NCBI GenBank assembly: GCA_051294905.1
Contig: CM119382.1
Coordinates: 22,940,001-23,004,000 of the forward strand
Length of the DNA: 64,000 nucleotides
Reading direction: 5' to 3'
Source of the DNA: Botryllus schlosseri
Lineage: Eukaryota
In this document: in pieces, positions 38,001-63,700 of the stretch
Layout: each line of letters starts with the position of its first letter
Numbering within the stretch: the first letter of the stretch is position 1
Made by a program: the position numbers and the translations under genes
The notes under the pieces: generated by a model
Databases searched by the model: none
What the model was told of the DNA's origin: nothing
The model's input: the letters and a program-made list of their open reading frames with translations, nothing else

Positions 38001-41000
38001 ATTCTATGATTTTATTCGAATCCGAGTTTTTCTACTACAATAACGTCGCTTCAAGTGGTTGGAATTGAGCCAAATTTGGTTAGCATCATCTCTACTGACA
38101 TATTACGAATTTTATGAATTTGACTGAAAAGTTTTGAAATTATTCATTTTTTTAATGATAAATTAATAACTTTCTACTACAAGATTCTCGCTTCAACCGG
38201 TTGGAATTGAGCCCAATTTGGTGTGCAGCGTTGTTTTAACCAACCTAACAATTTTTATCATAGGCAATGAAATCTGAAAAACTTTTCTTCTAGTGGTTGG
38301 CATTGAGTCAAAGTTGTTGTGCAGCTTTGTTTTAACCAAACTAAGAATTTTATCACATAGGCAGCGAGACTACCATGCGCATGTACAACACGCATGGTAG
38401 TTCTTTAAGACTTTAATCCACGACTATGAAATTTTGTGTCTGTATCATCGGCCTAGGGGACGTTGTGTAAAAAAAAGTTTGTCGAAAATATGTCTAGTTA
38501 AACTCGCATATAGATAAAATACTCCACTCCAATTTAGCTTGCTATTCAAAAGCCCCTACACGACTCCATCCCTGATCGAATTTGTTATGATGTCCATTAT
38601 GAGGGCACATAGTTTTGGGGCAGAATGGGTTACTAAAGAAATACTTTGTCAAAATCCGAAAGTAGGTCTTGCCTGATTTCACTAATTCCACCAGTGTTTT
38701 TCATTTTGGACAGTACTTCTACATCACAGATTTCATTATTTTTGGCACAATTTTTCCTGGAATACTTACTTTTTACGTACTTGCAAATGACCACTTCTAC
38801 TTGTACTTGAGTGTGAATATGCGTCGATACGTCTACTACCAACGATGCCTACTTTCGCCATCTCTACTCGCAGAATATTGAATGAAACGTTGATTTTACC
38901 CTACTGTGGCCGCATACCGGAATTTATTTGAAGTCAGAACTGTGATGCAATACATTGAATATTTTAGAAACCACAAACTTGGGCAATCGGACGCTATTCC
39001 TCCACCAAACGTGAATCGTAAGCAGGGTGATTGCTATCCATCCAAAAATGAAACCACAGAAAATCATGAGCATCCCAGGCATATCGAAGCCATCGTATCC
39101 TGAAGTCCAGCCGATGTATTTGTAAACTGGATTCATGGAGCTCGGGTGTTCTGAAGAAAAGTCGCCTTTTCAATAACACTTCAGGGTCAGCGCACATTGA
39201 GACCAGCTCCGGAATTTTAAAGCTCGGAAATCTTCAATTTTTTTTAAATGAGATTAGAATGAGAATTATAGCTAAACATTGATTTTTTTTTTCAAAAAGA
39301 TTAGAATTAGACTCACCGAATTCACAAAAACTTGTAAATTGAATTCATATTCCAAATTATCAAGAAATACATCAAATATCAGGATAATTTCATATCAAAT
39401 CAGTGGTACCAACGAATTCAGCACTTGATGTCCCATAATTCCTTACCATAACCAACCCCTACGTTAACGCTGAACTCTAACCCCAACCTAAGCTCTAACC
39501 GGCATACATAAATACATAGGCTACATTTATACATACATACATAGTATGTGAGGAGTGTCGAATATGCAAAGTTTCGAATATAAACAATCTAAAAATATAT
39601 CGAAACATTTTCGAATTTATTAATACCACAATATATCGCTCTCATGTGATATCACCAATATCAGATAGGCCTATTAATTTTCTATGTCATATGTACCAAC
39701 TACCGAATTCACTGGTAACTGTATGAATGGCAAGTGTCCGTACACCAAATTGATTCGTTTCGCGCTTTAGAGTTCTCTTGCAACATTTTCTGGAAATCAT
39801 GAACAAATTTGATCAGAATTAAATTACCGTCATTTTGATCCAATTATTATAATTAGACCATTTGAATTAACTATGACTTGTCCACGTCTGACTCACGCCA
39901 TTGAGACCAGTCCGGGAAGAAAAATGCCACCAGTAAATGCAATCCGTTCTGGCGGCTTCCCTCGGGCAGAATGTAGATAGAGTTCACGAGGGTGAGGGAG
40001 AACACGAATGGGGTGGCGAGCAGGAAAGGTATGTTCGAAGACTGTGACTGGATCACGCGCGCCGTTTTCCCGAAATAGAAAACTCCAAACCCGCAGAGAC
40101 AGTGAGTTATTCCACCGACCCACAAATCGTTCACGAACCTGAATGCGGTAATTGTAAGAAAATGTGCATCTATTTCTTCAAAGTGCTTAAGTTATTTTCG
40201 GGGTACTTTCTCTATTGTGCTGAGAGGTTATGATTTATAGCAGTGCTTTTCAGCCTGTTTCAGCACCATCCGCACTTTTTCAACAAAAATAACTAATCGA
40301 ACAAGCAAATTATTTTTCGACAAAATAAGTTGTTGGATTGTGTATAAGAGCCTCGAGTGCTTGGATGGCCAGGTTTATATATAGGCTATATATATATAAA
40401 CTTCAATATTGCAGCAAACAATACGTTCATATTGTTAAATTTATTCCAGTGGAAGCTTTTCGACTGGCTCTTTTCAGCAGTGAGAGAAGGTGCCCAGTTT
40501 ATTTGCATCTCCCGTGGATAGGCACATCTTGGAACAGGTTTGAAAAACAAGTAACATAATTTACCAATATACGTGCCGATGTGACAGTCGGTATGTGGGT
40601 CGCACATCTCAACGCTTGCAACAAAGAATTCGTCAACACGTCCCACGTCAAATTAGGAATTCGCAGGGTGATGACATGTCTGCTTCATCATCACAGTCCC
40701 TAGTTACCATGCGTGATTATGACCAAATAACAGCATGTAATTCTGCCCTCGGACAGCACCTATTGAAACACCCAGAGTGTGCAAAACATTACAATATCAA
40801 TCAGTTTTCCATAGTTGCTCGTGGTCGTTCTCTTTTTCATTTAAAGGTCCTTGAATCAACCATTAAAAAGCTGCAAAAGCCGATCGTCTGCCGCCAGAAG
40901 GAACATCTCTACACGCTGGGAATCTTCCATCAGTGTTGTTTTATCATTCAACTATTGTACGGCTGATTTTGTGTGTGCTGTACCGTAACCGTGCGCTGTT

Positions 41001-44000
41001 TACTGCCGTTCGCGACTTGTGTACTTGTCATTATTACGTCACAACGACAAAATTCTTTCTATATATCGAACTTTGTTAACCTCATATACTAGCGTTCACT
41101 GCTGAAGAGAGCCAGTCGAAAAGCTTCCAGTGGAATAAATTTAACAATATGAACGTATTGTTTGCTGCAATATTGAAGTTCTGTACTTCGAAAAGCCTAT
41201 ATATAAAAACATCCAGCAATCTAATCCAAGATACATCGTATTTTCGGAAGTGACGAATGCTTGCTGGCAAAAATCGTTTTTTAAGAGTAATGATACTACG
41301 GTTGTCGAACCTCCCTACATCTTGAAACTAATCTTGAGTACTTTCACGCATTTCATATGACCACTTGAAGTACTTTTGACACCCGTCAGTATTTCCCACT
41401 TTACTGGTATTAGAGCAGTGGTTCTTATTCCGGCGGGGGCGGGGGGATAGGGGCCCGAAACCTCTAAAGTTATAAAATGATTATTAACCTAATTTGTATT
41501 TTTTTAATTAGGCAAGGCATATGGGACAATTTCGCTTCGTAAGTGCGAAAACTTTGGGACTCACGTCATTGAAATGGTTGTCTCAGATGAAGTATCCGAC
41601 TGTGCAAACTGATTTTAATGGTCAAATTGCCAATACCCTGTCAATGCAAACATATCCCTGTTTTTGTGGTTTGTGTAAAAAATGAGAAATTGGATGGATA
41701 GGAAGGTCCAACAAAGTCAACAATGTTTGCAAAACATTTTGGATATTGAGTTGTCAGTCTCACCAAATTAGTAAACAATCGGTTGAAATATAAATTCCTG
41801 AATTTTTTTCCTAATCTGTCCGAATGAAGGAATTGAAAACTCGCCACGAAATCCGTTTTCTCCTGTGGTATAACCAATAAATAACTTCGAAATGAGATGC
41901 TAGATAGAATTGACTAGACTGGACGACGTGATACGCTCATCAAAAACTTACACCAAAAGCTACCGTTGGAAGCGTTACTCGTTAATATTACATTCCCACC
42001 ACCTATCTTTGTGACATGGATTTGTACAAGTTTTCAAGAAAGAGTACATGGAACTATAAACGGATTATATATCAGAAAGGAGATCTCAATTCGGAATACC
42101 GGTTTTCATTTCAAATCTAAGATGCGTATTTCCAAGACAATATATACAGCCTCAAAATTCGCATGGGAATAATAAAAGTCTACCCAATTTCTACATACAA
42201 AGTGGTGTAATTTACAAGAAAAGTCATTTCGTTGCCGTTTATCACTAGCCTATATTGACCGATGACCGTTGCACGATAATTGAGATAGTTTTGAACGAAA
42301 ACTTGACCGTCCATAAGGTGACCGCGAAGACAAAAAGTTTCGGAGCCACTGTACTAGATCATGGATTTTCCGCGTCACTTCTACTTCAACCTGGATATCG
42401 ACGTTGGCCACTTTTACCTCCTCGAGTTAAGATAGCAGAAACTCACCCCTGACAAGTAGCCCCCGGATTGTACTCAGTGAAAGTTTTCCCTGTTTCCGTG
42501 ACTACATTGGTATTCCCCTGAAATCCGAAAAATATCGTCACAGATGCGGAACCTGAAAAACCCGAATCCGTTCAGACCCGTGTCGATTTTTTTTTCTGCG
42601 AAACCAGGACTCACAAATTACCGACAGTCTCAGCAAACCGTTCAAAAATCCCGTCTTATATCTGACACAGTCCAAATCATTTCTTACGGCGCAGAGAGAC
42701 CGCAAGACTACACTTTCTACGTTGAAGTAGCCCACGAAATTTTCCCAATGCCTGACAGATATCAGCAGTAAACCTTAAAAAGTATAGACAGAATCCATGT
42801 CTATATTTTATTAGTTGACCACGCAGGATTTCGTTCATTGCGTTTGTTTCGAGCACTCTTCTTCCAGCTCGCATATTATGAAGCACATCGAAACTAAAAC
42901 TTGAGGAGCATGTAAATAAGGGAACTGAAAAGACTTGGGCAGCTTTCCAGTTGTCCAATTATATACTAATCATGCTAATTATAGCGAAATGCCGGTAATG
43001 TAGGCTAATTCTAATCAAATTTGTTAATTTGTTGCGATGCTCTAGTTTTAATTAGAATCTAATTTACCCCTGATGAAAGTGCTACAGGAGAACAGTAGCG
43101 TGCGAGACGATCCAAGCCTGCTGTAGCTGCCATTCTCACCGTTATGAGCATGAACTCTGATTTGTTACGAACTGGGTTTGGTTCGATCTCCGAGTTTTCG
43201 GAAATTAGGGAATTAAAATTATAATCCAATTTGAAAAATAAAACTCTTTAGCTATATTGCTAATTCTAATTTAATTTGGAAAAGTGCTAAAAATTTTCTA
43301 GTTGTCCAGATCATATAGCAGTGGTTCTTACGATTTTCAGCCCGCGACCCAAATCTGACTCTTGACGGCATCTCGCGACCAAGCCTCACACATGAAAAAT
43401 AATACATTGTTTATGTCAGTATGTCACGTTTCCTATATGCGTGTATGACACATCGACAGCGCTACTCTGTGAAACATATTTGACACACGTGGTTTCAAAT
43501 TGGTGTGCATTATTTTCTGTTCGGTTAACAATTGTAATTCATTGCTACCGCTGTCTTCTCTACTCAAATTGCAAGAACGTGACTATTCAATTGCCGACCA
43601 TTTCGACGAGCTGACATATCAATTCCGATGGTTTTGAAAATCAGCGGCGGCCACGGAGAATTTTGACCAAGGTTTTATCGTCCCCGATTATTCTGGCACC
43701 ACAGTTTGCCCAGCCGCATGTTGACCAAAACATCATATCTTCATGTTACCCTGCGCAGGTAGGGTTGCACTTGAAATAACTGAGCAGGCCTATATCATAG
43801 TCCCGCACACGGTCTTTGCACACCCCTACGATAAAACATCCCCACGGTACCCGACGGTGTTTTCCAGAGAAAGCAATGTCGGGCAAATCCTATCATCAAT
43901 TCAAGCCGATTTGTGAAATACAAAAATACACATTTTCGTGATGAAACCGTATTGCAGTAATAACTTTCTGAGTTTCTCGCTTATTGGCCATAGTACCCAA

Positions 44001-47000
44001 TACAGTGACCTTGAATGTTTACAAACTAACCACAGAAAATCTGGTAGAAGAAATAATTTTGTTGCAAGAAATTTGTTATATATTACATTCATATTGAAAG
44101 ATATGTCTGGTGCCGTCGTCACCCAAAACTATACCCTTCATGATTCTGTGGTTGCGATTCGTACTTTAAGAACCCCTGGCATACGGGGACTGGAAGATTG
44201 AAAATTTGAAAAAAGTTAAACAACATAGATTTTTCTGGTTGAAAATATGAACATGGTACCACTTCTCGCACCCCATGCCGTTTTCTCACCCCAATAATAT
44301 GTAAAAAGTAATATATTATTCAAGTACTTATTTTTATCTCATCCCAGCAGAGGGAGAATAGGATGCAATGTGAAATTGTTTCGTTGGTTGTATATTGTAC
44401 TAGTATTGTTATATAATATTAGCATAGGGAGTTGACTTTTGTTGACAAGCGGCGACTGCGACCTTAAATTGGTGTGAACTTTAGTTAGTCATTAAATAGC
44501 TTTCATATCTGTAAACCAGTGAACAATATTGACAGCGTGTCAATGGTAGGCCTTTATAGGTAGGAAGTGTGATTACAAGCAAGGTAGGATTCCGACGGAG
44601 ATGCCAAACTTCCTGACTAGACAAACTTTATGTGGCCTATTATCCAATCAAAATGTAGCGTATGGTCGTTTGACTATGTCAAGTCTAAACTTACGTTACA
44701 TTGATAATGAGGTAGGCTATTTCCCCAGAAAACAACGGTTTGGCTTTGGGGGTGACATGATGGAATCTTTTGTTTGGTTTGACCGTCTTGTTTTAGAATC
44801 TTGCCGTCGATATCATGCTGTGATTTCTGATCTTGGGATATTTGAGACAAACAGTTTAAACAAGAGGTTCCAAGTCACTCACTCGACATTGCTGATACGG
44901 ACAACCGCAGGGCAGAAGGAGGATGTACTCGGCCTGCCGTCGACGTGTCGTGCGTGGCGAGAATTTGCAGAAACAGAGTAGCAGCGGCCACAACGTGGAG
45001 AACCTTTTGTTAAGCAAATTCAAAGTCATCAGTTTTTGACACACTCCATTGTACGTTCTAGATGTCGGAACTAATTATCGACGACAATCCATTGCGGATT
45101 GTGTTTTAAAATTGGAATGACTTTCGCGAATGTCAGAAATATATTTTACGAAAGTTCGATGAGTGTGATGCGAAATATTTGACATATGTTCGACGAATAT
45201 TATACGAAAGTTCCACAACTGATCGACTATCGTTATGTGAAGGTTCTATAATGCTTCACTAACGTGCGTAGCTTTGCACTACATGTTTCGTAGATTTGAT
45301 ATGACCAATAGAGATTCATAGTCTTCTGCAGTGAAAAACAGTATCGAACCATAATTCTCATTGACAAATTACCTCGTAACGGTAAAGAACGTATATGATT
45401 TCAGTACTCAAAAATCTCATATCTCACTACTCGACTCGAATCATTAAAATTTATAGTAAATTCAGACTCGAGTACTTGAATTACTGTGCCCAGCCCTACA
45501 TTTACGGCCAGAGCTGTAATGAGTCGAGAAGTTCTTTATTACTTAAGTCAAGTCTCATATGTCAGGAATGATGACTTGCTAAAAGTATGTTAATAAGTAT
45601 AGTATTCCGTTCAATATCACCCAAATAGATTTAGAGACAGGAGAGGAACGTGATTTCGAATCGAGCTCATAATTTAATTGGTGGTGAATTGAATGGGATT
45701 GGACTTGAGTGGAGTCAAAATATTAAAATTAAAATGTGCTTGCGATTCGGAACCTTGTGACTTGTTTGCAACCGACGACCGCAGAACTCACCAAAGCAGC
45801 GATGCTGGATAGAAATGTGAACTTCCGCTTGCAAAACCCCGAAGCTTCTTTCGCCCTTCCTTTCTTGAACTTGAACGGGATGTCGACTATCCCCGAAAGG
45901 ATTCCCGTCAACGAGAAGAGAAGCAGAGAGATTGAGGCGTCCAAGTACGGGAGGACAGAAAACGCGAGAATGGCCGAACCCAGAGCGTGGAAAAGTTCTG
46001 GAATCAAACCCTGCGAACAATCAACGAGTTTGTCTGTTTGCTAATGGGTCAGAATTCTGGAAATTTGCCTGCGTTCACTACTAACACTGGCGGTTATGAT
46101 GTTAGGCTACTAAAGGTACTTGAAATTGTCATTTCACTACCACTGTAGATCTAACTATGGGCGAAACCAGACCCAGACTTCGCGACAGAAACGAAGTACT
46201 CTTTAGAAAATCGTCACGTTAACTTCTATTTCATTAAAATTTACTTCTACTTCCATTGAAGCTCCAACTGTGACCACACTGACCACCTCTGTATTGCAGA
46301 TATCATCGGATTTAAAATTTATAATTCTGTACAAGGAATAAAAAGCATAATGTGTGCCAAAGAACATGAAGTAACTTTGTTAGGACGAAAAACATTGTTG
46401 ACATTCGCCACAGGACATCAGACTAACCGAAAATCGGTAAATCCATTCCTAATCCCAATCCATTTGAAAAAAAAGTCCGAAATCCGAAGCCAATCCTGAT
46501 CCGACTAAATTTCACAAATCCGGTTTTCCCAAATCCTAATCCTAATCCTCGTTGTATAGGTAACTTTGCTCACCCAAGCGAAAGACTTCCATTTACTCTT
46601 AGTCATTTTCGTTTGATCTCTCTTCGCGTTGTACAGGCAAGACAGCACCGAGAGTGCTTCTGGGAAAGTGAGACACGTCATCAGTATCAGCATTGCGTGC
46701 AATCGCACGTATCGCCCGTCAAAATCGATGCAGCGCGTGTCGCGTGTCGAGTATTCGCGACTGTACGCGTTGGTGGTCACCAACAGGGTCGCCTGGAACG
46801 CATGAGTTGAACAACATAGAAATTTCCAAATTACAACTATACCCACACAGCTTTTGGAATCAATTATGATTAGAACTATAACTACACTTGTTATTTATAA
46901 ATTAAATTACGTTTCGAATTACAGCTAAACAGTTTTACTTCCAATTATAATATTTTTGGAATTATAGCAACGCAGTTTTCTTCTAAATTTTATTAGGATT

Positions 47001-48147
47001 GGAATTATATCTGCACATTTTTATCTACAGATTATATCACATATAGAACTATAGCAATACACTTTTTTTTCGAAATTAGATTAAAATCGGAATGATAATA
47101 AACATTTTTTCCAAGTAATATTTCGCTTAGAATTATAGCTACACAGTTTTTTAATTAGATTAGAATCAATATTATAGATGCACATGTTTCTACAAATAAA
47201 ATTCGATTCGAATTAATGACTTTTAAAATTGAATTTGATTTCGCATTGGAAAACAAATACAAAAAAAATCAAATTCAGTTCATATCAAATCACAGTTTTT
47301 CTACACAAAATTCCATGCAAGAAAATGTCACAGAACCTCTCAAATAGTCCAATTATCTATAGCTGTCCAAGTGTGCCCCAATCTCGGAACGTTTATCACA
47401 CGACAAAGCTCACCATAGACACAACAGCTCCCAGAAACACGCCGGTCGCCAACAGGATGACCATAAAAAACTTTGCGATAACCGCAGCTCGAGCAACCCA
47501 ATTTCCGTGGTTCGTCACATCATCATCCGGGTCGTCTCGAAACTTGTTCCAAATCTTTTCCGTGCTGATGAACAGCAAATGAGATTTGTCGCATTTAGAA
47601 TTTCAATTTTAGTCAGACTTGATCAAAGCAGTTAGCGTTGCTACTCAAGTAAAAATAACGCATTGAATATTATCTCAGATATATATCGTCGCGGAATCGG
47701 GTTGTTCAGAAATAACTATTTTTCCATATCCCGGGATTCACTTTTGAAATTATTGGGTTGCCTAAAAAGACGCTAAAAACCAACTTTGGCTCATTTTCAA
47801 CTGGTAGATGTGAATACACAGGAGTTTGAAAATTTTGATTTTTTTTTTAATTCAAAAATTTACTGTCCACCCCATGAAAATGTTAAATTGATTCAGTTCG
47901 GTATCGAAACCATGTCCGAAGTACAAACGAATACGAATCGAATTCAAGTCTAGGGTGGCATTCAAACTCAATTCCAAATCCAAGACCAGATCCAGATATA
48001 GATTAATAGTAGGCCAATAGAAATGATACTTTTGTTTTGTATAAAATTCGTCGATGGCGGCTTGACATTCGTTGTGACTTTTCTCAGATTCTTCTCGCTC
48101 TTTCTCAGACAGACGATCTCTCATCGCATCCGTGGGATCTGCGTTTT
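17012..48147 (-). CDS. CHS: Chitin synthase (GT2, metazoan type), multi-exon, ~1400 aa; N-terminus probably continues into the OTU exons
   Basis: Exons 5' to 3': 48147-48030, 47564-47414, 46792-46574, 46010-45792, 45003-44883, 42773-42615, 42552-42447, 40138-39897, 39150-38979, 37393-37289, 37228-37121, 36549-36492, 36431-36337, 35799-35617, 35142-34931, 30246-30040, 29853-29733, 29060-28955, 27482-27230, 25645-25377, 24515-24317, 22901-22811, ~22746-22665 (uncertain), 21923-21898 (uncertain), 21828-21739, 21197-21122, 18817-18653, 18388-18251, 17317-17235, 17123-17012 (tentative). All have GT-AG sites with matching phases. Motifs: HWENF, CATMWHET, HIIFDDA, TPYGGR, HLKDK, KRWSQ, LALDGDVDF, GAACGRIHP, QKFEYA, CSPGCFSL, QGEDRW, QRRRW, SWGTRE. 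Confidence 0.95.
18415..18600. repeat. TAGTTC-based minisatellite, copy 1 (CHS intron)
   Basis: Units of the form (TAGTTC)n-TAGTTGCGGATTTTGAAAAGTGAG. Confidence 0.7.
19827..21070. mobile_element. hAT Charlie/Buster-type non-autonomous element
   Basis: TIR CAGTGGTTCCCAAC...GTTGGGAACCACTG. Perfect TSD CTTTAACC. TCGCCCCC subterminal motifs. Confidence 0.9.
23222..24235. repeat. ~1-kb TAGTTC-based minisatellite (CHS intron)
   Basis: More than 20 imperfect ~30-45-bp units of (TAGTTC)n + GCGGATTTTGAAAAGTGAG. Confidence 0.85.
25377..25645 (-). CDS. CHS: Chitin synthase exon (SWGTRE and charged coiled-coil)
   Basis: ...YSLCNMNNVSWGTREVKTEEDLRREKEEEERRKEEKEKKK. Confidence 0.95.
27000..27130. repeat. 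TAGTTC-based minisatellite, copy 3 (CHS intron)
   Basis: Same unit and same strand as the arrays at 18415 and 23222. Confidence 0.65.
27230..27482 (-). CDS. CHS: Chitin synthase transmembrane exon (SLLGPAT)
   Basis: GGLMMSSLLGPATVVLVIQGAF... GTGAGT donor. Confidence 0.93.
27836..28225. mobile_element. hAT Charlie/Buster-type MITE (390 bp), same family as 19827-21070 in reverse orientation
   Basis: TIR CAGTGGTTCCCAAC. Perfect TSD CTCTAGCA. Many GGGGGCGA subterminal motifs. Confidence 0.92.
28955..29060 (-). CDS. CHS: Chitin synthase exon completing QRRRW
   Basis: RWVPSTMANIFEILENASLARKHNKYISLGYIAYQ. GTGAGC donor. Confidence 0.93.
29733..29853 (-). CDS. CHS: Chitin synthase catalytic exon (GEDRW...NQRR), absent from the ORF track
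   Basis: GEDRWLCTLLLKKGYKIEYCALSDSFTFCPEEFKEFYNQRR, joined in phase 2 to RWVPSTMAN at 29060. Confidence 0.95.
30040..30246 (-). CDS. CHS: Chitin synthase exon (QKFEY / CSPGCFSL / QWDQG)
   Basis: GSGPVAWFQKFEYAVGHWLQKTAEHVLGCVLCSPGCFSLF...HIQWDQG. Confidence 0.95.
30264..31623. mobile_element. Tc1/mariner-superfamily (pogo-like) non-autonomous element
   Basis: 17-bp TIR GGGGAGACCGGGGACAA at both ends. TA on the right and CA on the left (a mutated TA TSD). CAATTGTAAC subterminal repeats. Confidence 0.7.
31885..33561 (+). mobile_element. 5'-truncated CR1/L2-clade LINE 3' end, interrupted by a Charlie element
   Basis: ORF2 C-terminus FDDFFMPAKNVHSHYTR...KRSIDYSGPIIWNALPPHIRE...FKKALRDHLL, stop at 32118. 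The putative 3' UTR resumes after 33392 and ends in AATAAA plus a (CT)n tail. Confidence 0.7.
32236..33384 (+). mobile_element. Internally deleted hAT Charlie (GTF2IRD2/ZBED8-type) transposon with a transposase remnant
   Basis: TIR CAGGGGTTCTCA...TGAGAACCCCTG. Perfect TSD GTTTAGAG. Peptides LQLSDSTVTKRITAIS and YFSLALDESTDYTHIA*LIIQVRF at 32670-32835 include the first catalytic Asp region with an in-frame stop. Confidence 0.9.
34283..34545 (-). mobile_element. tRNA-derived SINE (family A) with a 14-bp TSD
   Basis: A box TAGCGCAGTGG and B-box-like GGTTTGAGTCC. Flanked by TGCATTACTGGAGG at 34269-34282 and 34546-34559. Homologous to 12226-12497. Confidence 0.85.
34931..35142 (-). CDS. CHS: Chitin synthase exon (KRWSQ / LALDGDVDF / GAACGRIHP)
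   Basis: Translation RHRKRWSQCMYMYYILG...YILALDGDVDFQPE...GAACGRIHPVG. TAG acceptor and GTGAGT donor. Confidence 0.95.
37730..38285. repeat. Foldback element, ~550-bp near-perfect palindrome (CHS intron)
   Basis: Arms ~37735-37990 and ~38020-38285 are reverse complements, sharing for example GGTTGGTTAAAACAACGCTGCACACCAAATTGGGCTCAATTCCAACCGGTTGAAGCGA. Related fragments lie at 35170-35470 and 58630-58830. Confidence 0.85.
40447..40482 (-). ncRNA. Degenerate hammerhead ribozyme copy in the inverted pseudo-LTR
   Basis: Reverse complement CACTG-CTGAAAA-GAGCCAGTC-GAA-AAGCTT-C-CACTG carries a G8A core change and a stem I mismatch. Confidence 0.65.
40490..40925 (+). pseudogene. PLE GIY-YIG endonuclease fragment
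   Basis: PVYLHLPWIG...; frameshifted NIIYQYTCRCDSRYVGRTSQRLQQRIRQH...SALGQHLLKHPECAKHY...LKVLES...CRQKEHLYTL. Confidence 0.85.
41097..41132 (+). ncRNA. Minimal type I hammerhead ribozyme
   Basis: CACTG-CTGAAGA-GA(GCCAG)TC-GAA-AAGCTT-C-CAGTG: stem I CACTG/CAGTG, full CUGANGA and GAAA core, short stem II, palindromic stem III AAGCTT, UUC cleavage triplet (predicted cut after 41127). Confidence 0.85.
41416..42351. mobile_element. Older hAT Charlie-type element (family of 1-230)
   Basis: CAGTGGTTCTT start and GGAGCCACTG end. Flanks TATTAGAG and TACTAGAT (6 of 8). Homologous to 1-230. Confidence 0.6.
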
Positions 48148-49087
48148 CTGGGGAGATAAATCGTCATTGTATTTACTGTATGTAGATAAATATTTGTATG
48201 TTATTGTATTGAGCTTATGAAGTTGAGTAATCTTGAGCCTAATACTTGAATAAGGCATGAGTTTTGCGTGTGGTGTAATTATCGCACCGCTGATACTGCT
48301 ACAGGGTTGTGATGATTACAGTCAATATCAAAGTCTGCTGCTCAATTAAAATCTCAATAATATACCGAAATTTGAACAAATTATGCAAGTGACTTTGTCT
48401 TTCTTGTTGCATTTACGGTGGTGGGATGCATTTACGTTGGATAAGCGTGTGGGCAAGTCAATATTAATTTCAATTCTTTTGGACGCGTTCAATAAATCAC
48501 AAACCACAGTCTTGCTACGGGATAACCAGTATTTGGATTTTGGAAGTGGAACCTTAGTCTATTCTGGTTAAGTAAATATGCAAGTGGCTATTTCAAAGTA
48601 AGTATGCATTCTGGACGAGGGAAACTGCCAATAAGTAGAAGTATAAGTAGTATGATATCATAACCACGTGAATAAATACCACTGCGTACCAAAATCGGAT
48701 GGAATTTTAATTAAAATTTATATTACATTGTTTTGTTGTTGTTGTTTTTTTTTTTTTTTTTGGGGGGGGCGAAAATTTCAAAAATGTCATTATTCGGACT
48801 CGACTTGAGTCACTTTGTGTGATTACCCGACCAGGCCATGACTGAGGAATAGTATATGACTTGACTAAAAACTCGTCTATCGATGCTTCGTAAATAGGCC
48901 CAGAAAATGTCTTATATCCGTTTGAGTGGGGAAGGGACTTAGGAAAATGAGTGTGTTACACTCCGTAACAGATAAGCCTATATTTTGGTTTATAGGGGCA
49001 CTGCACTCTAAAAATGATGTGGTCTCAAATTGAAGGGCAAAACGAAAGAAAAATTTTGGCCGCAGCCGTTTTCTTCAGAACGCCAAC

Positions 49088-49385
49088 GTAATGGAGCTGT
49101 AATGTATTGAAATTTCCACAGATGCATCGCGCTCCAGCAGTCACGAAGAGATCGAACTTTACTTTGTCAGTTGATGTTATGAAGGAAATAGAATACACTA
49201 GGCCCGATTTTGACATAAATCTCCTGACTGGACATCTTCGGTTGAACGCGGTATCTAAACCAGCTTGGCGTGTACGACATATTTCCTTCATAACATCGGC
49301 TGACAACTATATAAAGTTCGATCTCTGCGTGACTGCTGGAGCGTGATGCATCTGTGGAAATTTTAATACATTACAGCTCCATTAC
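49088..49385. repeat. ~300-bp foldback (arms ~105 bp)
   Basis: 49088-49195 is the reverse complement of 49280-49385 with few mismatches. Confidence 0.85.
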
Positions 49386-50171
49386 TCGGCAAGCAGATCA
49401 AAAATGTCCATAAAATTGTCTTGGGTCGAATAGAAAGTGTTACGTAAACCGAATGCAGTGGGCCGTTTAATCTAGCAGTTTTCACACCATTTAGTACACT
49501 GTGTTGTTTTGCTCAACATATCGCAATATCTTAATTGAAGCGAGACTGCGGTTCTTATATTAAGAAGCGCATGAGGAAAAACATTGTCATCATGAAGTAG
49601 ACAACATTGTCAGAATGAAATAACACGGTGTGTCACCAGCAGTGTATTCAGCATTGCCAGCCAACAACTGCTACTGTTGAACGCTCTTTCTCCATTCTTG
49701 GCAGAATATTAAGTAACTACAGACACTTTCTACCCGAGAATGTAGAAAAGTAGAAATTTCAAATATTCCTACCATAATTATAATGTTGTATTCTTCATAA
49801 GTCGGTCTAGGTTTCGTTAAAATAAAGTTTTTTCATGTAAAAATTTGTCAGTTTTGAAGTCCTAATTTTTTTAAACTTCGTAAGGACGGACAGTTACAAC
49901 CGGAAATGAGGATAATTAGTACAATTCTAACATTATGTGCGATAAAACGTAATAATTTACATACATGAGGGCAAAATTTAGTCAAATGTAAGTTTTAAAG
50001 GTAAAAAAATGTCAAAATTATGATTTTTTCAGGCAAAATCTTACGTTTTTTAGGTAAAAGAAATCGCCCTAATGATCAGCGAACCGATTAATCAATAATC
50101 ATTACTAGTACTTGAAAAATAAGACTACAAAATGTTCGAATTAAAATGTTAACAGTGAAAAAATGACTGTA

Positions 50172-50830
50172 CAGTCGTCTCTGCTCAATTCTAATACAAT
50201 TTCACAATTATTTCTGTTAGTTTGACACAATCAAGAAAACGTCGTTCGCTTTAACACAAGATGCAATTACGGTATTAGTGGCTTTGGTGAACCAATGACA
50301 ATAGATGCAGCAACTATCGACCATGTACAAATGTAGCTTTTACTTCGGTACAATTGCGTCCATCTTCTAGAACAGAATGGTACTGAAAATTTCAGCAGAA
50401 AACGTTAAATTGGTCAATGAAGTAAACAATACAGAGGTAAAGGCGTTTCCTGGATAGTTCGTTGCTAACTTTTCCATCAATGATTTTTTGTCAAGTTAAA
50501 ATATTGTTTGCTTTTTAATAACTACTGTTTTTGGTGTACTTTTATGTGAAATTGCCAATTCAGACCTTGCTGTATAGCTTACTACTGTATTTGAAGTATT
50601 ACACTAATAATTTACCTTTTATCCGTCTATTACACAGTAATTTACAGTATTTGTTGAATCGCGTGGTATCGAAATACATTACTATACAATACAACTTTAC
50701 TGAAGGTATAATTTTTGTGCTATATGCGATTATTGCCAATAACTGCAGTATAGTGAACCTGCAAACATCGATTTTCAATTCGGCCATAAGTGAGAGGAAA
50801 CATAGTGTCCGAATTAAGCGGAGTCGACTA
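50172..50830. mobile_element. Tigger/pogo-like non-autonomous element
   Basis: Imperfect TIR CAGTCGTCTCTGCTCAATTC versus (reverse complement) TAGTCGACTCCGCTTAATTC. TA on both flanks. Confidence 0.55.
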
Positions 50831-51324
50831 TATTATATGAATGGCAGTAGAATACTGGATTCGAAATCGAATCAATCACAGGCCTCTGTTTATTTGGGCG
50901 CGACACTGTATACTTGGAAGTCGGTATAATTACGAGGTAGCGTATATATTTGCGCGACCCGGCCAGTCAACAATGATTCACACGTCTGTTATTATTTGCT
51001 AAACAACAGTACAGTTCAGTTGAGTTTTTTAATAGTTCCATCATCACAAGATTGCGATATATCACCGATATCATATTTTCAATATTTGAATTGTATATTG
51101 TTACATTGTACAATTGTATTTTTGTCTTCTCCTTTCTGAAGAATCGCATGAGCTCTATTGCTATAACACAAATATGCCACTGATACAAGTAATATGGCAC
51201 AATGTTATTATTTTACAATATCTACAGTTTCGTCAGAAGGTATTCGGTGATCTCCCAACGCATTGGGATCTATCGGCAGATATCTTAGCCTAAATTACCG
51301 CTTAAAAGAAGTGCTACAGAATCA

Positions 51325-51475
51325 GACTCGAAGTCGTGGACTCCGAGTCGGAGTCAAGGAAATGTTTTAGCACTCATTGGAGAAGGAGTTGAAGTCAGAG
51401 TCGTGAAAAAGATACTGACTAAGTTCTGGCTCGGAGTTTGTAAAAATTCTCTGTACTCTGACTCCCAATTCGACC
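51325..51475. repeat. Degenerate fragment of the CCGACT/GGAGTC element family
   Basis: Reverse-complement similarity to 8960-9060 (GTGAAAAA-ATACTGACT...CGGAGTTTGT). Confidence 0.55.
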
Positions 51476-53272
51476 GTACTTCATATATGAAACCGAGTGA
51501 TTTCAAAGGTATCTGAAGATTGTCAACAGTAACTAAAAATGCGATTTGTATGTACCAACTATATGAGCAGTAAAACAATACAACTGTTGTTATAATTATT
51601 ATTATAGTAACATTATTGATAATCATTCACATATTATTTGCAATTCGCAATTCAGCTGCATAGAGAAAGATAATTGTGGGATGCTTCTTCAAGACTAACA
51701 CAAAATTACAAATGGAGTCACAAATTTTTACGTTTCGGAATTATACTTCGTTACCATGAAAGAGTAAAGGCATCGTCCAGTTATTTAAGTGACAGCATCG
51801 CTTATAAAATTAATGCAGATATCGTCGCAGTGGAATCAAAGTAGCATATGTCCAGTTTTCAAATTTTGAAAGTTAACTTTTTTTAACTTGAAGAAAAAAT
51901 CCACTTTTCGAAATTTTTTGAAATTTATTCGGTCATATCTTGGCCATGGTTATATCTGTCTCAGTTTTTCATAGTTCATCTGGGACAATATATGGATGAA
52001 AGAAGATGAAAACTTTACGTGCAGTTAATTCTCTCAAAGTGTGCAAAACGGACATGAGATATTTTGAGTACACTGTGGCGATATAACAAAATATTTTTTC
52101 CGACTTTACAAAACCAAAAATATTTCTAGTAAGGATCTCGGCCGCCTTGATTGAGCGAATGTTGAAAAAATCGTTCCAGTAGTCGACGAGTAGGCCTACT
52201 TGTTTAGGTGCATGTAGACAAAAGCTATTTGGCCACTCTCTAAGTTTCGTTCCTGACCACCGCTTAACAGTAGTCATGTGTGTGTGTTCTTACAATTAGT
52301 GTCCCTATAGTGTGTAGTGTGGGAATTTGTACACCTCGTATTAGTCGCCAACTCGTACACAAGAGCTAAGCTACTCTTCTACTGTTTTTACAATATTGCG
52401 GCAAGCGCGAAGAAATTTTTGTAGTTGCAAGAAATTCAGCAAATGTTACATATTCAATGCTCGATCTGGAGGGGTCACTACTCAACTGTAAACCTTCGCG
52501 ACCCATACTTCAAGAAAACCCTGATCTATACTATCATGTTTGCCAATCATGACACGGTATATGTGCAGAGGTAGTCAAAGTTGTCACCGTCGGCACTCAA
52601 GTGAAAGTAGACGTTAAGATTTCCAAGTAAGTTAGAAGTAGTAAAGTAAGTTAAAAAATCGAAAACTGTCTAATAGAAGTACAAGTGGACTAAAACAAAG
52701 CTACAGTTGTAGGTAGTGCGAGTGGGCATTTTTTGATTGATGGTTCATTGATTATTAAACTATAGATACCGCAGATAAGATGTATAGGATCGTTATCTGA
52801 GAAATCGAGATTCACAGATATAGCCTAAGCGGGGTGCAATAAGACTTTGATTGGTGTTTGTAGGTATGCATGTATGAGGGGTTTTATGGTGCGCGACTAC
52901 TAAGGTCTTGTGCACCAGGTCTGAGCGAGCTATGGTTCAATCAGATACGTCTACACAATATAACAAATTCAACGACCGGAATAACCATGCGCGGATCAGT
53001 TAGCAGACATTCAAAGTTAGAGCTCACACTGCTACGTTGAGCTACATTTTTTAAATATTGTCTCTGTTTGATTGGGATTATTATTATGTAGGGACGAAAC
53101 AGATTTACGGTTCTCAGTTGGTTGTATGTGATGAGAAATGGGTTTAAACAGTTGTTTGTTTTCTGTCTCCCTGGTTTAGCAGCTCAATATGCCGAGCGTC
53201 GCAGACTGCATCACTCCATGAAATACGAGATATTTCAGAATTATTTTAAATAATTACATTAAACCAACTCAC

Positions 53273-54229
53273 GATCAACAGCAAATCTTGTTTTCTTCTT
53301 CAGTGTGAGGGCGCAATCCCTCGCTTCCCACGTGGTTCGGATTTCGCGTCCCCGGATCGGATCCGGGTACGAGTCCCCCGCCTTTGTGGCGAAATAATGC
53401 CTTCCCGCTAGATGTCCAAGTGTGACGAAAGACTCGGTCGCTTTTTGAGGAAACACGCTTAACACGCAGTCATCCTCTGGACCGGAAGTTGTGACGACAT
53501 TGATTACGCGGCCGATGACGTTGGCGGTCGCCTGTACAAAATGTATTTATTGATGTCAGTGAAAATTAAATTAAATATAGAACAGTATCATTATGTTATT
53601 ATTTCCAGAATTATCAGTCGCAGGAGAGAAGAGTTGTTCTGCTGATCATGGCGCATTTAAACTTGCTTCGGCCTCGGATTAACATTATCGGTGACGCATT
53701 ACCCGAAACGCAGTCTGGTAATCGTCACTTAACTAATCCTTACCTTTTTGCGACCACGGAATAAAAATGTGCGCCGTCTTTGTCCACACTTACCGCATAT
53801 TTGAGAAGCTCATTCCTAAAAATAGGTTGTGCACCTCGGGAAATGGTGCGGCTCCTTCGTCCAGACTTACTCGCGGCATAATTGGAAGCTTATAAGTAAA
53901 TCAACTTTTCTCTCGATTACCTGAACGACGATATGATCTGCGAAGTGTCCACTCCTAGCCATCTGTTGCAGATATTCCTCTCGACCTTGGTCGAGTTGTG
54001 CGAACCAATTCTCGAAGGGATCCGACCCGATCGATTCGTTCTGCCGCAAATGTTCAACGCATTCCGACCGCAGACCTTTATGGGAGGTTGTGACATCACC
54101 GAGCTGTTTGGCAACGGCCCGAAAGAAACTGTCTCCGTCCACCTTCACTTCGTCGCGACATAATTTAAGATTATTTAACCGAGAATCGAGAACCGATATC
54201 TCCGATTTTGGGATCGCGTAGACTGACAT
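53273..54229 (-). CDS. Two exons encoding an OTU (ovarian tumour deubiquitinase-like) domain with Cys replaced by Ser; probable 5' exons of the chitin synthase gene
   Basis: Exon 54230-53921: MSVYAIPK...LDSRLNNLKLCRDEVKVDGDSFFRAVAKQL...HKGLRSECVEHLRQN...EEYLQQMARSGHFADHIVVQ. It joins in phase 0 to exon 53531-53273: ATANVIGRVINVV...VTLGHLAGRHYFAT...AVD, ending at a GTGAGT donor in phase 1. A possible short first coding exon lies at 54407-54360. Confidence 0.85.
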
Positions 54230-54561
54230 ACTGCAGAATAGACGATATATTTTCCTCACTACATCGGCCACTAATTAAGCAATTTCTGCTGGGTTTAAAA
54301 CAATAGCTATACTTCAAGCAGATCATCTCCTAGAACTACCAACATATCATCATAGTCACGTATTTGTAGTAATGCAGTTGTTGTTTTGGTGCATATGGTC
54401 AGACATCCTGCGAAATGAAGAATACTCCGGTGCACTACCATTGCGTCCGACACAGTGGTTCACAACATTTACTAATCTGGCGTACCCGTGCGCTAGGAAC
54501 CTCGGATTTTTGCTGGATACAAAATCTATATACCATACTGCACGTCTGATATACATTAGGC

Positions 54562-62238: not shown

Positions 62239-63700
62239 ATGGTCAATAAATGCTGTGCTTATGGTTGCATGGCTGGATATTTGATAACTAAACAAAACGT
62301 TTCAATTTCCATTTGAGGATTTGGAGTTACAAAAAATGGATATCTTTCGTGAATGGACGTGATTGGAAGCCAACGAAGAATTATGTGATTTGTGCGTTGC
62401 ACTTCGAAGCAAAGTACATTAAAGACTGTGGCTTTCGAAAAAATAACTGCTCTTGGATAGAAAACCAGTTCATACCATCCGATCGGATCATGACCTGCAA
62501 CGGCCTTCATTGATTCCGACTATGACCCCTTGCAGAAAACCACCGAAGAGAAGGATCTTTCAGAATGATCAGTTAAAAGATTTTGAGCTGTCTGATAAAA
62601 TGAGCAGTTTATAAGATTTGACCGAGTCCCACACTACAGAAAGCTATGCCATGTACAAAAGAGGGTAATCAATGTGTAATTTTCCACGGTATGGAATTCA
62701 ATGATGACTAGGTGCATGTGACGTGGCGCATTATTCAACTTCCCGAAATATCTCAAAAATGTATGAGACAAATCCGAGCGAGACAATCCGAGCACGATTT
62801 ACTGGAAGAACTTTTCGAGCCAGGAAATTTGTCTTTCCTCCATTCTCATTCGCCGTTGATTGTTCAGGTGTATCATCACCCAGCGGATTTATTGCATGGA
62901 GCAATCTTCACAAAATCAGGGAATGTCATGATAATGATTCAAATTTGTGGAAAGCGCCAAAAGTGATATGCCTCGTTACTACATCCAAGCAGAATGTCAA
63001 CTTAGCTCTTGCTCCATTCTATGAGTCGACTATTGAAGCTTGCAAAAGTTACTTGCCTCTCACGGAAGATATATGGCTTCATTCTTGAACCTGATTAATG
63101 CTTGGTTGACGATTCTCATGCTATAGGCAAATGTGTGGGGGGAGGTTTCTGGTTAGTTCAACAGAAGTTACCGATTCTGAAAAGATAATTCTGCTCTGTT
63201 CCATCCTAAAATATGACATCAAGCTCAACTAATTTTTACCATTTCAAAAAAGTCATTGAAGAAGTGGCTATTGAAATTACCGAATCATTTCTATCTCCTT
63301 ACAGTGAGAAGGTGTCTGTAGTTGACTGGGTAACTTGGAAAGCAAGTTCACGCTATTTCGACTTACTCGAGATCGTGGGGGACTGCTTACTCCCTCAGAA
63401 CCACTTGTCGAGTTTGTTTCATACAGATTTTTGATCCTAGACTGTTCTGATAAAATCATCTGCCCTCACCTTAAGTCGCAGTGAATAAGTTTTGCGTCGT
63501 TTCGTTTTTATTTTTTATTTTTTTGGTGGGGGGATGGGGGGCTTTGCACTTTGCATGTTATGATCATCGAGATCAAGCTTTGAAATTGGCGACAAAATCA
63601 TTGCGAATATATATATTTCAATAACAAGCAGAAGCTAGTTATTGCCTCTGTCAGAAAAATGCTTTAAAAACGGACTTTAAAACAACGACAGTTGAGCAAG
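62239..63700 (+). pseudogene. Decayed THAP-domain P-element-type (THAP9-like) transposase
   Basis: MVNKCCAYGC / FQFPFED / KKWISFVNGRDWKPTKNYVICALHFEAKYI forms a C2CH THAP signature across two frameshifts. It is followed by RKPPKRRIFQNDQ, LWKAPKV...SKQNVNLALAPFYESTIEA and RDRGGLLTPS, with many disruptions. Confidence 0.8.

What the first reader, a model, noticed from the sequence alone, without database searches (positions are those of the whole stretch)
47414..54407. Candidate OTU-domain / chitin synthase fusion gene
Seen in sequence: the OTU exon 53531-53273 ends at a canonical GTGAGT donor in phase 1, and without splicing it stops a few codons later. Exon 48147-48030 has a CCCCAG acceptor in phase 1, and its end phase 2 leads into the first conserved chitin synthase exon (NTEKIWNKFRDDP). 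All are on the same strand. The spliced junction reads ...RFAVD-Q-NADPTDAMRD... in frame, giving a ~1600-aa protein. Established knowledge: animal and fungal chitin synthases accept accessory domains such as myosin motor and SAM domains, and their abundance and trafficking are regulated by ubiquitination (best known for yeast Chs3). Inference: a cytosolic N-terminal OTU domain could link ubiquitin sensing to chitin synthase trafficking or stability. I do not recall this architecture being described, but I cannot search.
Basis: partly seen in the sequence, partly recalled or inferred. Interest (0 to 1): 0.88.

Follow-up and report, generated by a model that had tools for sequence, protein, structure and literature searches.

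The report
Chitin synthase with dead OTU head
This is a real single gene in which a chitin-making membrane enzyme carries an N-terminal OTU (deubiquitinase-like) domain that has lost its catalytic cysteine; the same domain pairing was already noted in 2012 in predicted sea-squirt and amphioxus proteins, so it is a confirmed further example, not a new kind of protein.

Summary
On the minus strand, OTU exons 54229-53921 and 53531-53273, linker exon 48147-48030 and the first chitin synthase (CHS) exon 47564-47414 have the stated splice sites and phases and read in frame.

The fusion is supported three ways:
- Transcript contigs of run X1 stop exactly at the 53273 donor. Depth arithmetic places their next 51 bases on 48147-48097, continuing into 47564.
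- Five other loci, from four other assemblies, have an OTU ORF followed on the same strand by collinear CHS exons. Four have a strong phase-1 donor at the OTU end; all five have a phase-2 acceptor at the first CHS exon.
- Between two of those loci the OTU evolves as slowly as the CHS exons (pN 0.23, synonymous sites saturated).

The OTU is probably not an active protease. The window has Ser for the catalytic Cys. The relatives lose Cys, His or both, yet one relative models as an OTUD3-like fold.

The architecture is not new. Guerriero 2012 (PMC4937987) lists an OTU domain in predicted CHS of Ciona intestinalis and Branchiostoma floridae.

A CHS-only mRNA made by spliced-leader addition at 48147 could not be tested. 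The scan has no earlier finding of this on other DNA.

The parts
53921..54229 (-). OTU exon 1. ATG at 54229-54227, 103 codons, phase 0 end. It holds the Cys-loop motif DGDSFF, with Ser in place of the catalytic Cys. A good acceptor (tctattctgcag) ends at 54231, two bases upstream of the ATG (one base, T at 54230, lies between); it is a possible spliced-leader or 5'UTR acceptor.
   Evidence: (Pfam OTU E 5.5e-4)
53273..53531 (-). OTU exon 2. 86 codons plus 1 nt, with the His motif GRHYFAT. It ends at the GTGAGT donor in phase 1. If unspliced, a stop follows after four codons.
   Evidence: X1 contig record 8 covers 53431-53273 and leaves the genome exactly at 53273.
48148..53272 (-). Intron of 5,125 nt between the OTU and the linker exon. 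It has no AATAAA or ATTAAA in its first 1 kb. It holds high-copy repeats at about 48900-50100, including an inverted repeat 49088-49161 / 49312-49385.
48030..48147 (-). Linker exon, 118 nt, phase 1 in and phase 2 out. It is acidic (QNADPTDAMRDRLSEKEREESEK...) and contains an in-frame ATG at 48124.
   Evidence: X1 records 1 and 2 cover 48126-48030. Depth arithmetic places record 8 on 48147-48097.
47414..47564 (-). First conserved chitin synthase exon, with the WNKF/acidic motif and transmembrane helix 1.
   Evidence: X1 record 1 continues from 48030 into 47564. The equivalents in L001, L002, L004, L005 and L006 carry P(A/P)YDQ(F/Y)IC with a phase-2 acceptor.
38972..46792 (-). N-terminal multi-pass membrane domain of the chitin synthase. 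Exons lie at about 46792-46574, 46010-45754, 42773-42578, 40138-39897 and 39150-38972. Some borders are approximate, and one or two small exons may be missing.
   Evidence: Exon-chaining model. Collinear tblastn matches to L001-L006. Pfam ChitinSynthase_IV_N.
25377..37464 (-). Catalytic GT2 domain and the transmembrane cluster after it. Exons lie at about 37464-37289, 37228-37121 (CATMWHE), 36549-36492, 36431-36337, 35799-35617, 35142-34931 (LALDGDVDF), 30246-30040, 29853-29733 (GEDRW...QRR), 29060-28955 (RW...), 27482-27230 and 25645-25377 (SWGTRE).
   Evidence: 65-80% identity to L003
18251..21828 (-). Probable C-terminal exons: a coiled/acidic stretch, the FW..YLEP motif and the last transmembrane helices. 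The true 3' end is not resolved.
   Evidence: model only; no cross-species or RNA check

Best explanation
One gene on the minus strand, from about 54230 to about 18000, encodes a multi-pass GT2 chitin synthase. Its first ~190 residues form an OTU-fold domain. An acidic ~40-residue linker exon joins that domain to the first transmembrane helix.

Shown here:
- The OTU exon 2 donor (53273) is spliced to the linker acceptor (48147), and that exon to the first chitin synthase exon, in transcript contigs.
- The reading frame stays open through all chitin synthase motifs.
- The same OTU-linker-CHS order is kept in five other loci, and the intron phases (1, then 2) are the same where they could be read.

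Inferred:
- The OTU head sits in the cytosol. It has no signal peptide, and Lys/Arg residues flank the N-terminal side of helix 1.
- It is not a working cysteine protease. The nucleophile is Ser here; in relatives the His is Asn, Phe or Leu, and the Cys is Ser or Thr in several.

The most likely role is a non-catalytic docking module, either for ubiquitin or a ubiquitin-like modifier on a partner, or for another protein. Such a module could control sorting, surface residence or turnover of the synthase, much as myosin-motor or MIT heads do in other chitin synthases.

I put the fusion itself at about 0.9. I put the non-catalytic regulatory role at about 0.4. The confidence given for this field (0.8) is for the structural claim: one fusion gene with a catalytically impaired OTU head.
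For: 1. RNA.
- X1 record 8 is 210 nt at depth 4.51. It lies on 53431-53273 for 159 nt, and its remaining 51 nt leave the genome at the donor.
- X1 depth in bin 48100-48299 is 2.42. That equals [27 nt x (6+3.9) from records 1 and 2, plus 48 nt x 4.51]/200 = 2.419.
- Bin 47900-48099 is 3.12, which needs 3 more nt of record 8. The 51 nt therefore lie on 48147-48097.
- Record 1 (251 nt) covers 48126-48030 and then 47564 onward; bin 47500-47699 = 65 x 6/200 = 1.95.
- The contig breaks at 48097 and 48126 flank the C/T difference at 48096 by 30 nt. That is a k=31 assembly bubble, not a transcript end.
- Record 8 accounts for all X1 depth in the bin just past the donor (53100-53299); the next bin (52900-53099) has none.

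2. Conservation.
- L001/L003, L002, L004, L005 and L006 each have an OTU ORF followed by collinear chitin synthase exons on the same strand.
- L001, L004, L005 and L006 have strong phase-1 donors at the OTU end (T|GTGAGT, G|GTAAGA); L002 has G|GTAAAA after a putative extra intron inside the OTU.
- All five have a phase-2 acceptor before the P(A/P)YDQ(F/Y)IC exon. The full OTU-linker-CHS frame was traced by hand in L001, L002 and L004.
- The L002 linker has no in-frame ATG, so it must be read from the OTU exon.
- In L004 the OTU and linker exons lie at most about 150 nt apart, in one ORF.

3. Selection.
- L001 and L002 align at DNA level only at exons, the OTU included.
- OTU pN is 0.23 against pS 0.92, like the adjacent chitin synthase exons.

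4. Intact enzyme. The open model carries CATMWHE, DGD, GEDRW, QRRRW and SWGTRE.

5. OTU fold and lost triad.
- The AlphaFold model of relative P0006 has pLDDT 82 and matches OTUD3 4bou at TM 0.81, then DUBA, OTUD1 and Otu2.
- Alignments A1 and A4 show the catalytic residue states.

6. No AATAAA or ATTAAA within 1 kb after the donor.

7. The same domain pair was reported in predicted proteins of Ciona and Branchiostoma.
Against: - The joint 53273>48147 was not printed in the joints table, which showed only the 15 deepest of 30. It rests on contig lengths and depth arithmetic.
- X1 is labelled 'RNA?' and its depth is low (4-10).
- Two bulk RNA runs, X8 and X9, gave no reads on any exon.
- No single molecule was shown to span from the OTU ATG to the catalytic exons.
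- Depth on exon 2 (4.5) is about half that on exons 3-4 (9.9). This would also fit an additional CHS-only mRNA.
- Exon 2 alone has no Pfam hit, and exon 1 is just under the Pfam cut-off.
- The transmembrane count before the catalytic domain (8-9 by hydropathy) is too uncertain to prove the topology.
- The known OTU pseudo-enzyme OTULINL does not bind ubiquitin, so ubiquitin binding here is only a guess.
Confidence: 0.8

Rival explanations
1. Two mRNA forms share the locus. One is the OTU-CHS fusion. The other is a CHS-only mRNA made by spliced-leader trans-splicing (or an intronic promoter) at the 48147 acceptor, translated from the in-frame ATG at 48124. This adds to the best explanation and does not replace it.
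For: - Other agents' notes describe this genome as a sea squirt with spliced-leader trans-splicing and operons (not checked here).
- The ATG at 48124 lies 23 nt after the acceptor.
- X1 depth on exons 3-4 (6+3.9) is about twice that on exon 2 (4.51).
- A 16-nt leader would form a short dead end in the assembly graph. Assemblers clip such ends, so contigs cannot exclude it.
Against: - The X1 contig runs unbranched from exon 2 for 51 nt into exon 3. A second well-covered upstream sequence would have broken it 30 nt after the joint.
- The in-frame ATG in the linker is not conserved: none in L002, and different places in L001 and L004.
- The depth difference rests on roughly 12 against 22 reads.
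Confidence: 0.3
2. There are two separate neighbouring genes: a small OTU protein ending ...FAVDRELV, and a chitin synthase starting at 48124. The joined contig is then a rare read-through (conjoined) transcript without function.
For: - The unspliced exon 2 stops four codons after the donor.
- The intron is long, at 5.1 kb.
- Expression is low, and the RNA label of run X1 is uncertain.
Against: - The arrangement, strand and order are kept in five other loci. A strong phase-1 donor is seen at the OTU end in four, and a phase-2 acceptor before the first CHS exon in all five.
- One of those loci has only about 150 nt between the OTU and the linker.
- The L002 linker and the conserved PPYDQYIC motif have no start codon of their own.
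- There is no poly(A) signal within 1 kb.
- X1 gives no coverage of the intron beyond the donor.
- The OTU is as constrained as the chitin synthase exons.
Confidence: 0.05
3. The OTU head is still an enzyme in this species. It would be a hydrolase using Ser (with the retained His and Asp) as nucleophile, removing ubiquitin or a ubiquitin-like modifier from the synthase itself.
For: The window copy keeps DGD, the ADH motif and the His of GRHYFAT. Only the Cys is changed, and it is changed to the isosteric Ser.
Against: - From established knowledge: Cys-to-Ser versions of OTU enzymes are the standard inactive mutants.
- All ten related OTU sequences that extend to the His position have lost it (Asn, Phe or Leu). 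At the Cys position six of the thirteen relatives keep it; the others have Ser or Thr. Yet the domain stays under constraint.
- Together these point to a function that does not need catalysis.
Confidence: 0.07
4. The OTU exons are a recent capture from a transposon. OTU domains sit in Mutator-type and other elements of this genome. They would be spliced in by accident.
For: First-stage notes list several transposon-borne OTU domains elsewhere in this genome (not checked).
Against: - The OTU head is shared, at the same place and with the same intron phase, by loci in four other assemblies at 33-39% identity to the window's exon 1. The join is therefore old.
- No transposase ORF was seen in the ORF lists on either side of the OTU exons.
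Confidence: 0.02

Closest known systems
Predicted OTU-containing chitin synthases of Ciona intestinalis (XP_002119921) and Branchiostoma floridae (XP_002590824, XP_002590818), noted by Guerriero 2012 (PMC4937987)
   Same: Both have an OTU (pfam02338) domain and a GT2 chitin synthase in one predicted polypeptide of an invertebrate chordate.
   Different: Those were automatic gene models, listed in a table and one sentence. They had no transcript check, no intron-phase comparison and no look at the catalytic residues. The amphioxus models also carry discoidin, SAM or other domains; Pfam scans of ten ORF pieces found none here, but not every exon was scanned. I could not fetch those sequences, so orthology is not tested.
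Chitin synthases with other N-terminal cytosolic accessory domains: myosin motor heads in fungi and lophotrochozoans, MIT domains in oomycetes (Zakrzewski et al. 2014, PMC3942024)
   Same: The logic is the same: a soluble N-terminal module fused to the multi-pass synthase, thought to couple it to trafficking or the cytoskeleton.
   Different: The module here has a papain-like OTU fold, not a motor or MIT domain. No function has been shown.
OTUD-type OTU deubiquitinases (OTUD3, OTUD5/DUBA, OTUD1, yeast Otu2)
   Same: The fold matches: the model of relative P0006 matches OTUD3 4bou at TM 0.81 with rmsd 2.3 A. The motifs DG(D/N)xFF and ADH/ADD are recognisable.
   Different: The catalytic Cys is Ser in the window. 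The His is lost in the related loci. The domain is covalently tied to a membrane enzyme.
OTULINL/FAM105A, the membrane-localised OTU-class pseudo-deubiquitinase of vertebrates (reviewed in PMC7862380)
   Same: It has an OTU fold with a disrupted triad and is held at a membrane, where it is thought to mediate protein-protein contacts.
   Different: It belongs to another OTU subfamily (OTULIN-like). It is anchored by its own short membrane motif and is not fused to an enzyme. It does not bind ubiquitin, which warns against assuming ubiquitin binding here.

Membership tests
OTU-chitin synthase fusion architecture (Guerriero 2012) | OTU domain and Chitin_synth_2 domain encoded in one reading frame of one transcript | tested here: met
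   The frame is open across e2/e3/e4. Phases and order are conserved in five other loci. A full-length single molecule was not shown.
OTU-chitin synthase fusion architecture (Guerriero 2012) | Orthology to the published Ciona or Branchiostoma proteins | not testable with these tools
   Those accessions could not be fetched. The representative search with exon 1 returned no long protein with an N-terminal OTU.
Metazoan GT2 chitin synthase | Catalytic motifs CATMWHE, DxD (LALDGDVDF), GEDR, QRRRW and SWGTRE, in order and in frame | tested here: met
   QRRRW is split over exons 29853-29733 and 29060-28955. Pfam Chitin_synth_2 hits.
Metazoan GT2 chitin synthase | Multi-pass membrane domains on both sides of the catalytic domain | tested here: met
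   The hydropathy scan of the rough model gives 8-9 segments before the catalytic domain and 6 or more after it. Pfam ChitinSynthase_IV_N hit.
Metazoan GT2 chitin synthase | Chitin-polymerising activity | not testable with these tools
   Needs an enzyme assay or a genetic test.
Active OTU cysteine deubiquitinase | Catalytic Cys in the DG(N/D)C(L/F)F loop | tested here: not met
   The window reads DGDSFF (codon AGT). Ser also appears in P0002, P0006, P0007, P0028, P0029 and P0032, and Thr in P0037.
Active OTU cysteine deubiquitinase | Catalytic His in the C-terminal HY motif | tested here: met
   The window has GRHYFAT. The ten related OTU sequences that reach this position have Asn, Phe or Leu there.
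Active OTU cysteine deubiquitinase | OTU fold | tested here: met
   Tested on relative P0006 (39% identical to exon 1), not on the window protein itself, because a spliced protein has no reference. pLDDT 82; OTUD3 TM 0.81.
OTU-class pseudo-deubiquitinase | OTU fold with an incomplete triad that is kept under purifying selection | tested here: met
   pN 0.23 against pS 0.92 between L001 and L002, like the neighbouring chitin synthase exons.
OTU-class pseudo-deubiquitinase | Lack of isopeptidase activity | not testable with these tools
   Needs a biochemical assay.

The most novel reading that the evidence does not exclude
The N-terminal OTU head is an old, obligatory, catalytically dead module of this chitin synthase lineage. 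It would read ubiquitin or a ubiquitin-like mark, or dock a specific partner, to set where and how long the synthase stays at the membrane. That would make it a pseudo-deubiquitinase hard-wired to a polysaccharide synthase, which has not been studied in any organism.
Probability: 0.35. Interest if true: 0.65.

Novelty: new member of a known kind. Interest (0 to 1): 0.45.

Why it matters
Little is known about how animal chitin synthases are sorted and switched off outside insects. In sea squirts chitin has been linked to gut barrier structures (from my own knowledge, not checked here).

Here the same N-terminal OTU head recurs in six loci. It sits at the same intron phase where that could be read, and it evolves as slowly as the membrane exons. 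So the head is part of how the enzyme works, not an annotation accident.

Its degenerate catalytic site makes one clean question testable: what does a dead OTU domain do on a synthase?

For genome annotation, the OTU exons and the chitin synthase should be modelled as one gene. That is not obvious across a 5-kb repeat-filled intron with a stop codon just past the donor.

Tried and rejected
- Read laying was allowed once. Raw RNA runs X8 and X9 gave zero depth on the exons.
- The search for homologous proteins with exon 2 found nothing.
- The same tool with the 658-aa retroelement ORF, tried to learn the species from paralogous copies, found nothing.
- The representative search with exon 1 gave only 27 hits. 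None was a long protein with an N-terminal OTU. The long hits were OTU domains inside kinase, Mab-21, Schlafen or TNFR architectures of other invertebrates.
- The contigs of the two closest relatives, P0001 and P0002, could not be fetched.
- The atlas search only said 'OTU'.
- The PDB sequence search with two catalytic exons found no solved close relative, so topology could not be borrowed.
- Rfam found nothing in the window.
- Motif and Pfam scans of downstream ORF pieces found no SAM or discoidin domain.
- The first exon-chaining model missed conserved exons and added doubtful ones. The second, with a conservation bonus, is better but still has weak donors at 45754, 38972 and 37289 and a doubtful exon at 43156-43068.
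- dS between loci is saturated, so no dN/dS ratio is given for the OTU.
This says nothing either way.
- A spliced protein has no reference in these tools, so the full-length protein could not be sent to Pfam, AlphaFold or the protein searches.

Full report
**Observation.** I read 54500-47400 on the minus strand and translated the exons.
- OTU exon 1 starts at the ATG at 54229 and ends at 53921 (phase 0, donor GTAATC).
- OTU exon 2 is 53531-53273. It ends ...GAT C|GTGAGT in phase 1. Unspliced it reads RELV and stops.
- The linker exon is 48147-48030. It follows ...tctccccag and ends in phase 2 before GTATCA.
- Exon 4 is 47564-47414. It gives (N)TEKIWNKFRDDP and the first transmembrane helix.
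- The spliced junction reads ...RFAVD-Q-NADPTDAMRD.

Pfam sees OTU in exon 1 (E 5.5e-4, 20.9 bits, cut-off 23.3). It sees Chitin_synth_2 and ChitinSynthase_IV_N in downstream exons.

**Transcript evidence.** The raw bulk RNA runs X8 and X9 had no reads on the exons. X1 ('RNA?', Logan contigs, 2015) covers only exons and high-copy repeats.

- X1 record 8 is 210 nt at depth 4.51. It lies on 53431-53273 for 159 nt and then leaves the genome exactly at the donor, with 51 nt placed elsewhere.
- The joints table printed only the 15 deepest of 30 joints, all of them repeat joints of X2. I therefore placed the 51 nt by arithmetic on the binned depths.
- Bin 48100-48299 is 2.42. That equals [27 x (6+3.9) + 48 x 4.51]/200 = 2.419.
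- Bin 47900-48099 is 3.12. That equals [70 x 6 + 49 x 3.9 + 3 x 4.51]/200 = 3.12.
- Bins 53100-53299 (0.61) and 53300-53499 (2.98) are fully explained by record 8.
- The 51 nt therefore lie on 48147-48097.
- Record 1 (251 nt, depth 6) covers 48126-48030 and then continues at 47564; bin 47500-47699 = 65 x 6/200 = 1.95.
- The contig ends at 48097 and 48126 sit 30 nt on either side of the C/T difference at 48096. That is the signature of a k=31 bubble, not of a transcript start.

So the assembly graph of X1 holds a continuous path: exon 2, exon 3, exon 4. There was no X1 coverage of the intron next to the donor. No AATAAA or ATTAAA lies within 1 kb after it.

**Relatives.** A full HMMER scan with exon 1 gave only 27 hits.
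- The best were short ORFs at 39-45% identity (P0001, P0002, P0006, P0007).
- The long hits carry OTU domains inside unrelated invertebrate architectures.
- Fetching the contigs of P0006 and P0007 and searching them with all minus-strand ORF pieces of the window showed the same layout in both. The OTU ORF is followed on the same strand by collinear chitin synthase exons. In L003 these run through to the catalytic domain at 65-80% identity.
- A profile search gave ten more OTU ORFs. The three contigs I fetched (L004, L005, L006) show the same arrangement.
- L004 comes from the same assembly as L001 but from another contig, so that organism has two such genes.

**Conserved exon structure.**
- In L001 the OTU ORF ends ...AAC T|GTGAGT (phase 1, stop five codons later). 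The linker exon starts after ttttacag and ends ...CCA TT|GTGAGT (phase 2). The next exon starts after tatttag with ...PAYDQFICEPPEDD and helix 1.
- L002 has G|GTAAAA, then ttatcag|AAAATGACG...GCG TT|GTAAGT, then tcatag|GTTGGAG...PPYDQYIC. Its linker has no in-frame ATG, so it can only be translated from the OTU exon.
- In L004 the donor is AAC G|GTAAGA and the linker follows within about 150 nt, in the same ORF.
- L005 and L006 have G|GTAAGA phase-1 donors and phase-2 acceptors before PPYDQFIC.

The phases (1, then 2) are those of the window.

**Selection.** L001 and L002 align at DNA level only at exons, including the OTU. By Nei-Gojobori counting the OTU has pN 0.23 and pS 0.92. The two neighbouring chitin synthase exons have pN 0.20-0.25 and pS about 0.75. 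Synonymous sites are saturated, so I give no ratio. The OTU is clearly constrained as much as the membrane exons.

**The chitin synthase.** Motif scans and a home-made exon-chaining model helped by cross-locus conservation give an open frame of about 1455 aa.
- DGDSFF at 31, RHYFAT at 147, WNKF at about 233, helix 1 at 261-279.
- CATMWHE at 748, LALDGDV at 913, GEDRW at 1020.
- QRRRW at 1058 (split between two exons), SWGTRE at 1239.

Several exon borders in the N-terminal membrane domain are approximate, and the 3' end is not resolved. No SAM or discoidin domain was found in the ten ORF pieces scanned. Hydropathy gives 8-9 segments before the catalytic domain, too uncertain to settle the topology by parity. 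In L001 and L002 three Lys residues precede helix 1 and an acidic stretch follows it. Together with the lack of a signal peptide, this points to a cytosolic N-terminus. That is an inference.

**The OTU domain.** Alignments A1 and A4 show the window has Ser (AGT) where OTU enzymes have the catalytic Cys (DGDSFF). It keeps the His (GRHYFAT). Among the relatives:
- Cys position: Ser in P0002, P0006, P0007, P0028, P0029 and P0032; Thr in P0037; Cys in P0001, P0030, P0031, P0033, P0034, P0035 and P0036.
- His position: Asn, Phe or Leu in all ten related OTU sequences that extend to it (P0006 and P0028-P0037).

An AlphaFold model of P0006 (pLDDT 82, pTM 0.77) matches OTUD3 (4bou, TM 0.81), DUBA, OTUD1 and yeast Otu2. 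So the fold is kept and the chemistry is not: a pseudo-enzyme. This agrees with the first-stage note s1-244058 on this window.

**What is known.** A full-text search found one paper linking the two domains. [quoted passage not shown] It also lists OTU among the domains of B. floridae XP_002590818 and XP_002590824. That paper gives no validation or discussion. Zakrzewski 2014 (PMC3942024) reviews myosin, SAM, MIT and other accessory domains of chitin synthases and does not mention OTU. OTULINL/FAM105A is a membrane-localised OTU pseudo-enzyme that does not bind ubiquitin (PMC7862380).

**Context from the scan.** Other agents' notes call this genome a sea squirt with spliced-leader trans-splicing. 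They treat Ciona and Styela as other species; I did not check this. It raises a rival I could not test. The 48147 acceptor might also receive the spliced leader and give a CHS-only mRNA translated from the ATG at 48124. The twofold higher X1 depth on exons 3-4 would fit this, but it rests on few reads. It would add an isoform, not remove the fusion. The strong acceptor that ends two bases upstream of the OTU ATG may likewise be a leader acceptor.

**Verdict.** The fusion gene is real (about 0.9) and old. The architecture was already noted in 2012, so this is a new member of a known kind. New here are the transcript and intron-phase support, the spread over six loci, and the degenerate catalytic site. 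The function of the OTU head is inferred. I favour a non-catalytic docking or regulatory module for trafficking or stability (about 0.4) over residual enzyme activity (below 0.1).

Noticed in passing
window 49088-49161 and 49312-49385 (within 48900-50100): An inverted repeat sits inside the OTU-linker intron, with 74-nt arms 96% complementary and 150 nt apart. The surrounding ~1.2 kb has summed contig depth in the thousands in the RNA-type run X1, and above 100,000 in X2. It is therefore a very high-copy element that is also present in RNA.
   Followed up: partly
window 47786-47953, 35171-35422, 38196-38404: Similar short ORF translations (…FQPV…/…EFENFDF…/…TQCQPLEEKFF…) recur in three chitin synthase introns. 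This suggests a short interspersed element family scattered through the gene.
   Followed up: no
window about 23200-24200, minus strand: A long run of imperfect repeats translates as …SKSATRTRTTHF… units, so it is a minisatellite of about 30-36 nt. It lies in the intron after the SWGTRE exon.
   Followed up: no
window 62313-62513, plus strand: A short ORF has a THAP-like signature (…WKPTKNYVICALHFEAKYIKD…). It is probably a transposon relic upstream of the gene.
   Followed up: no
window 54231-54229, minus strand: A strong acceptor (tctattctgcag) ends two bases upstream of the OTU start codon (one base, T, lies between). No upstream coding ORF was found in the next 10 kb. In a trans-splicing organism this would fit spliced-leader addition just upstream of the ATG.
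   Followed up: no
L004 (ERZ22157276 ctg13820l) versus L001/L003 (ERZ22157276 ctg13638l): One assembly holds two OTU-chitin synthase loci on different contigs. In P0037 (L004) the catalytic position is Thr, and the OTU ORF reads through a ~150-nt intron into the linker exon.
   Followed up: partly
L003 10671-13204: A reverse-transcriptase element (RVT_1, HTH_animal) sits on the opposite strand inside an intron of the related chitin synthase.
   Followed up: no
hits P0003, P0011, P0013: The OTU domains nearest to this one outside the chitin synthase group sit in kinase-OTU, Mab-21-OTU and TNFR-OTU-Schlafen proteins (P0003 is from the brittle star Amphiura filiformis; the sources of the other two were not looked up). 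This hints at a promiscuous OTU module in lineage-specific, immune-type architectures.
   Followed up: partly
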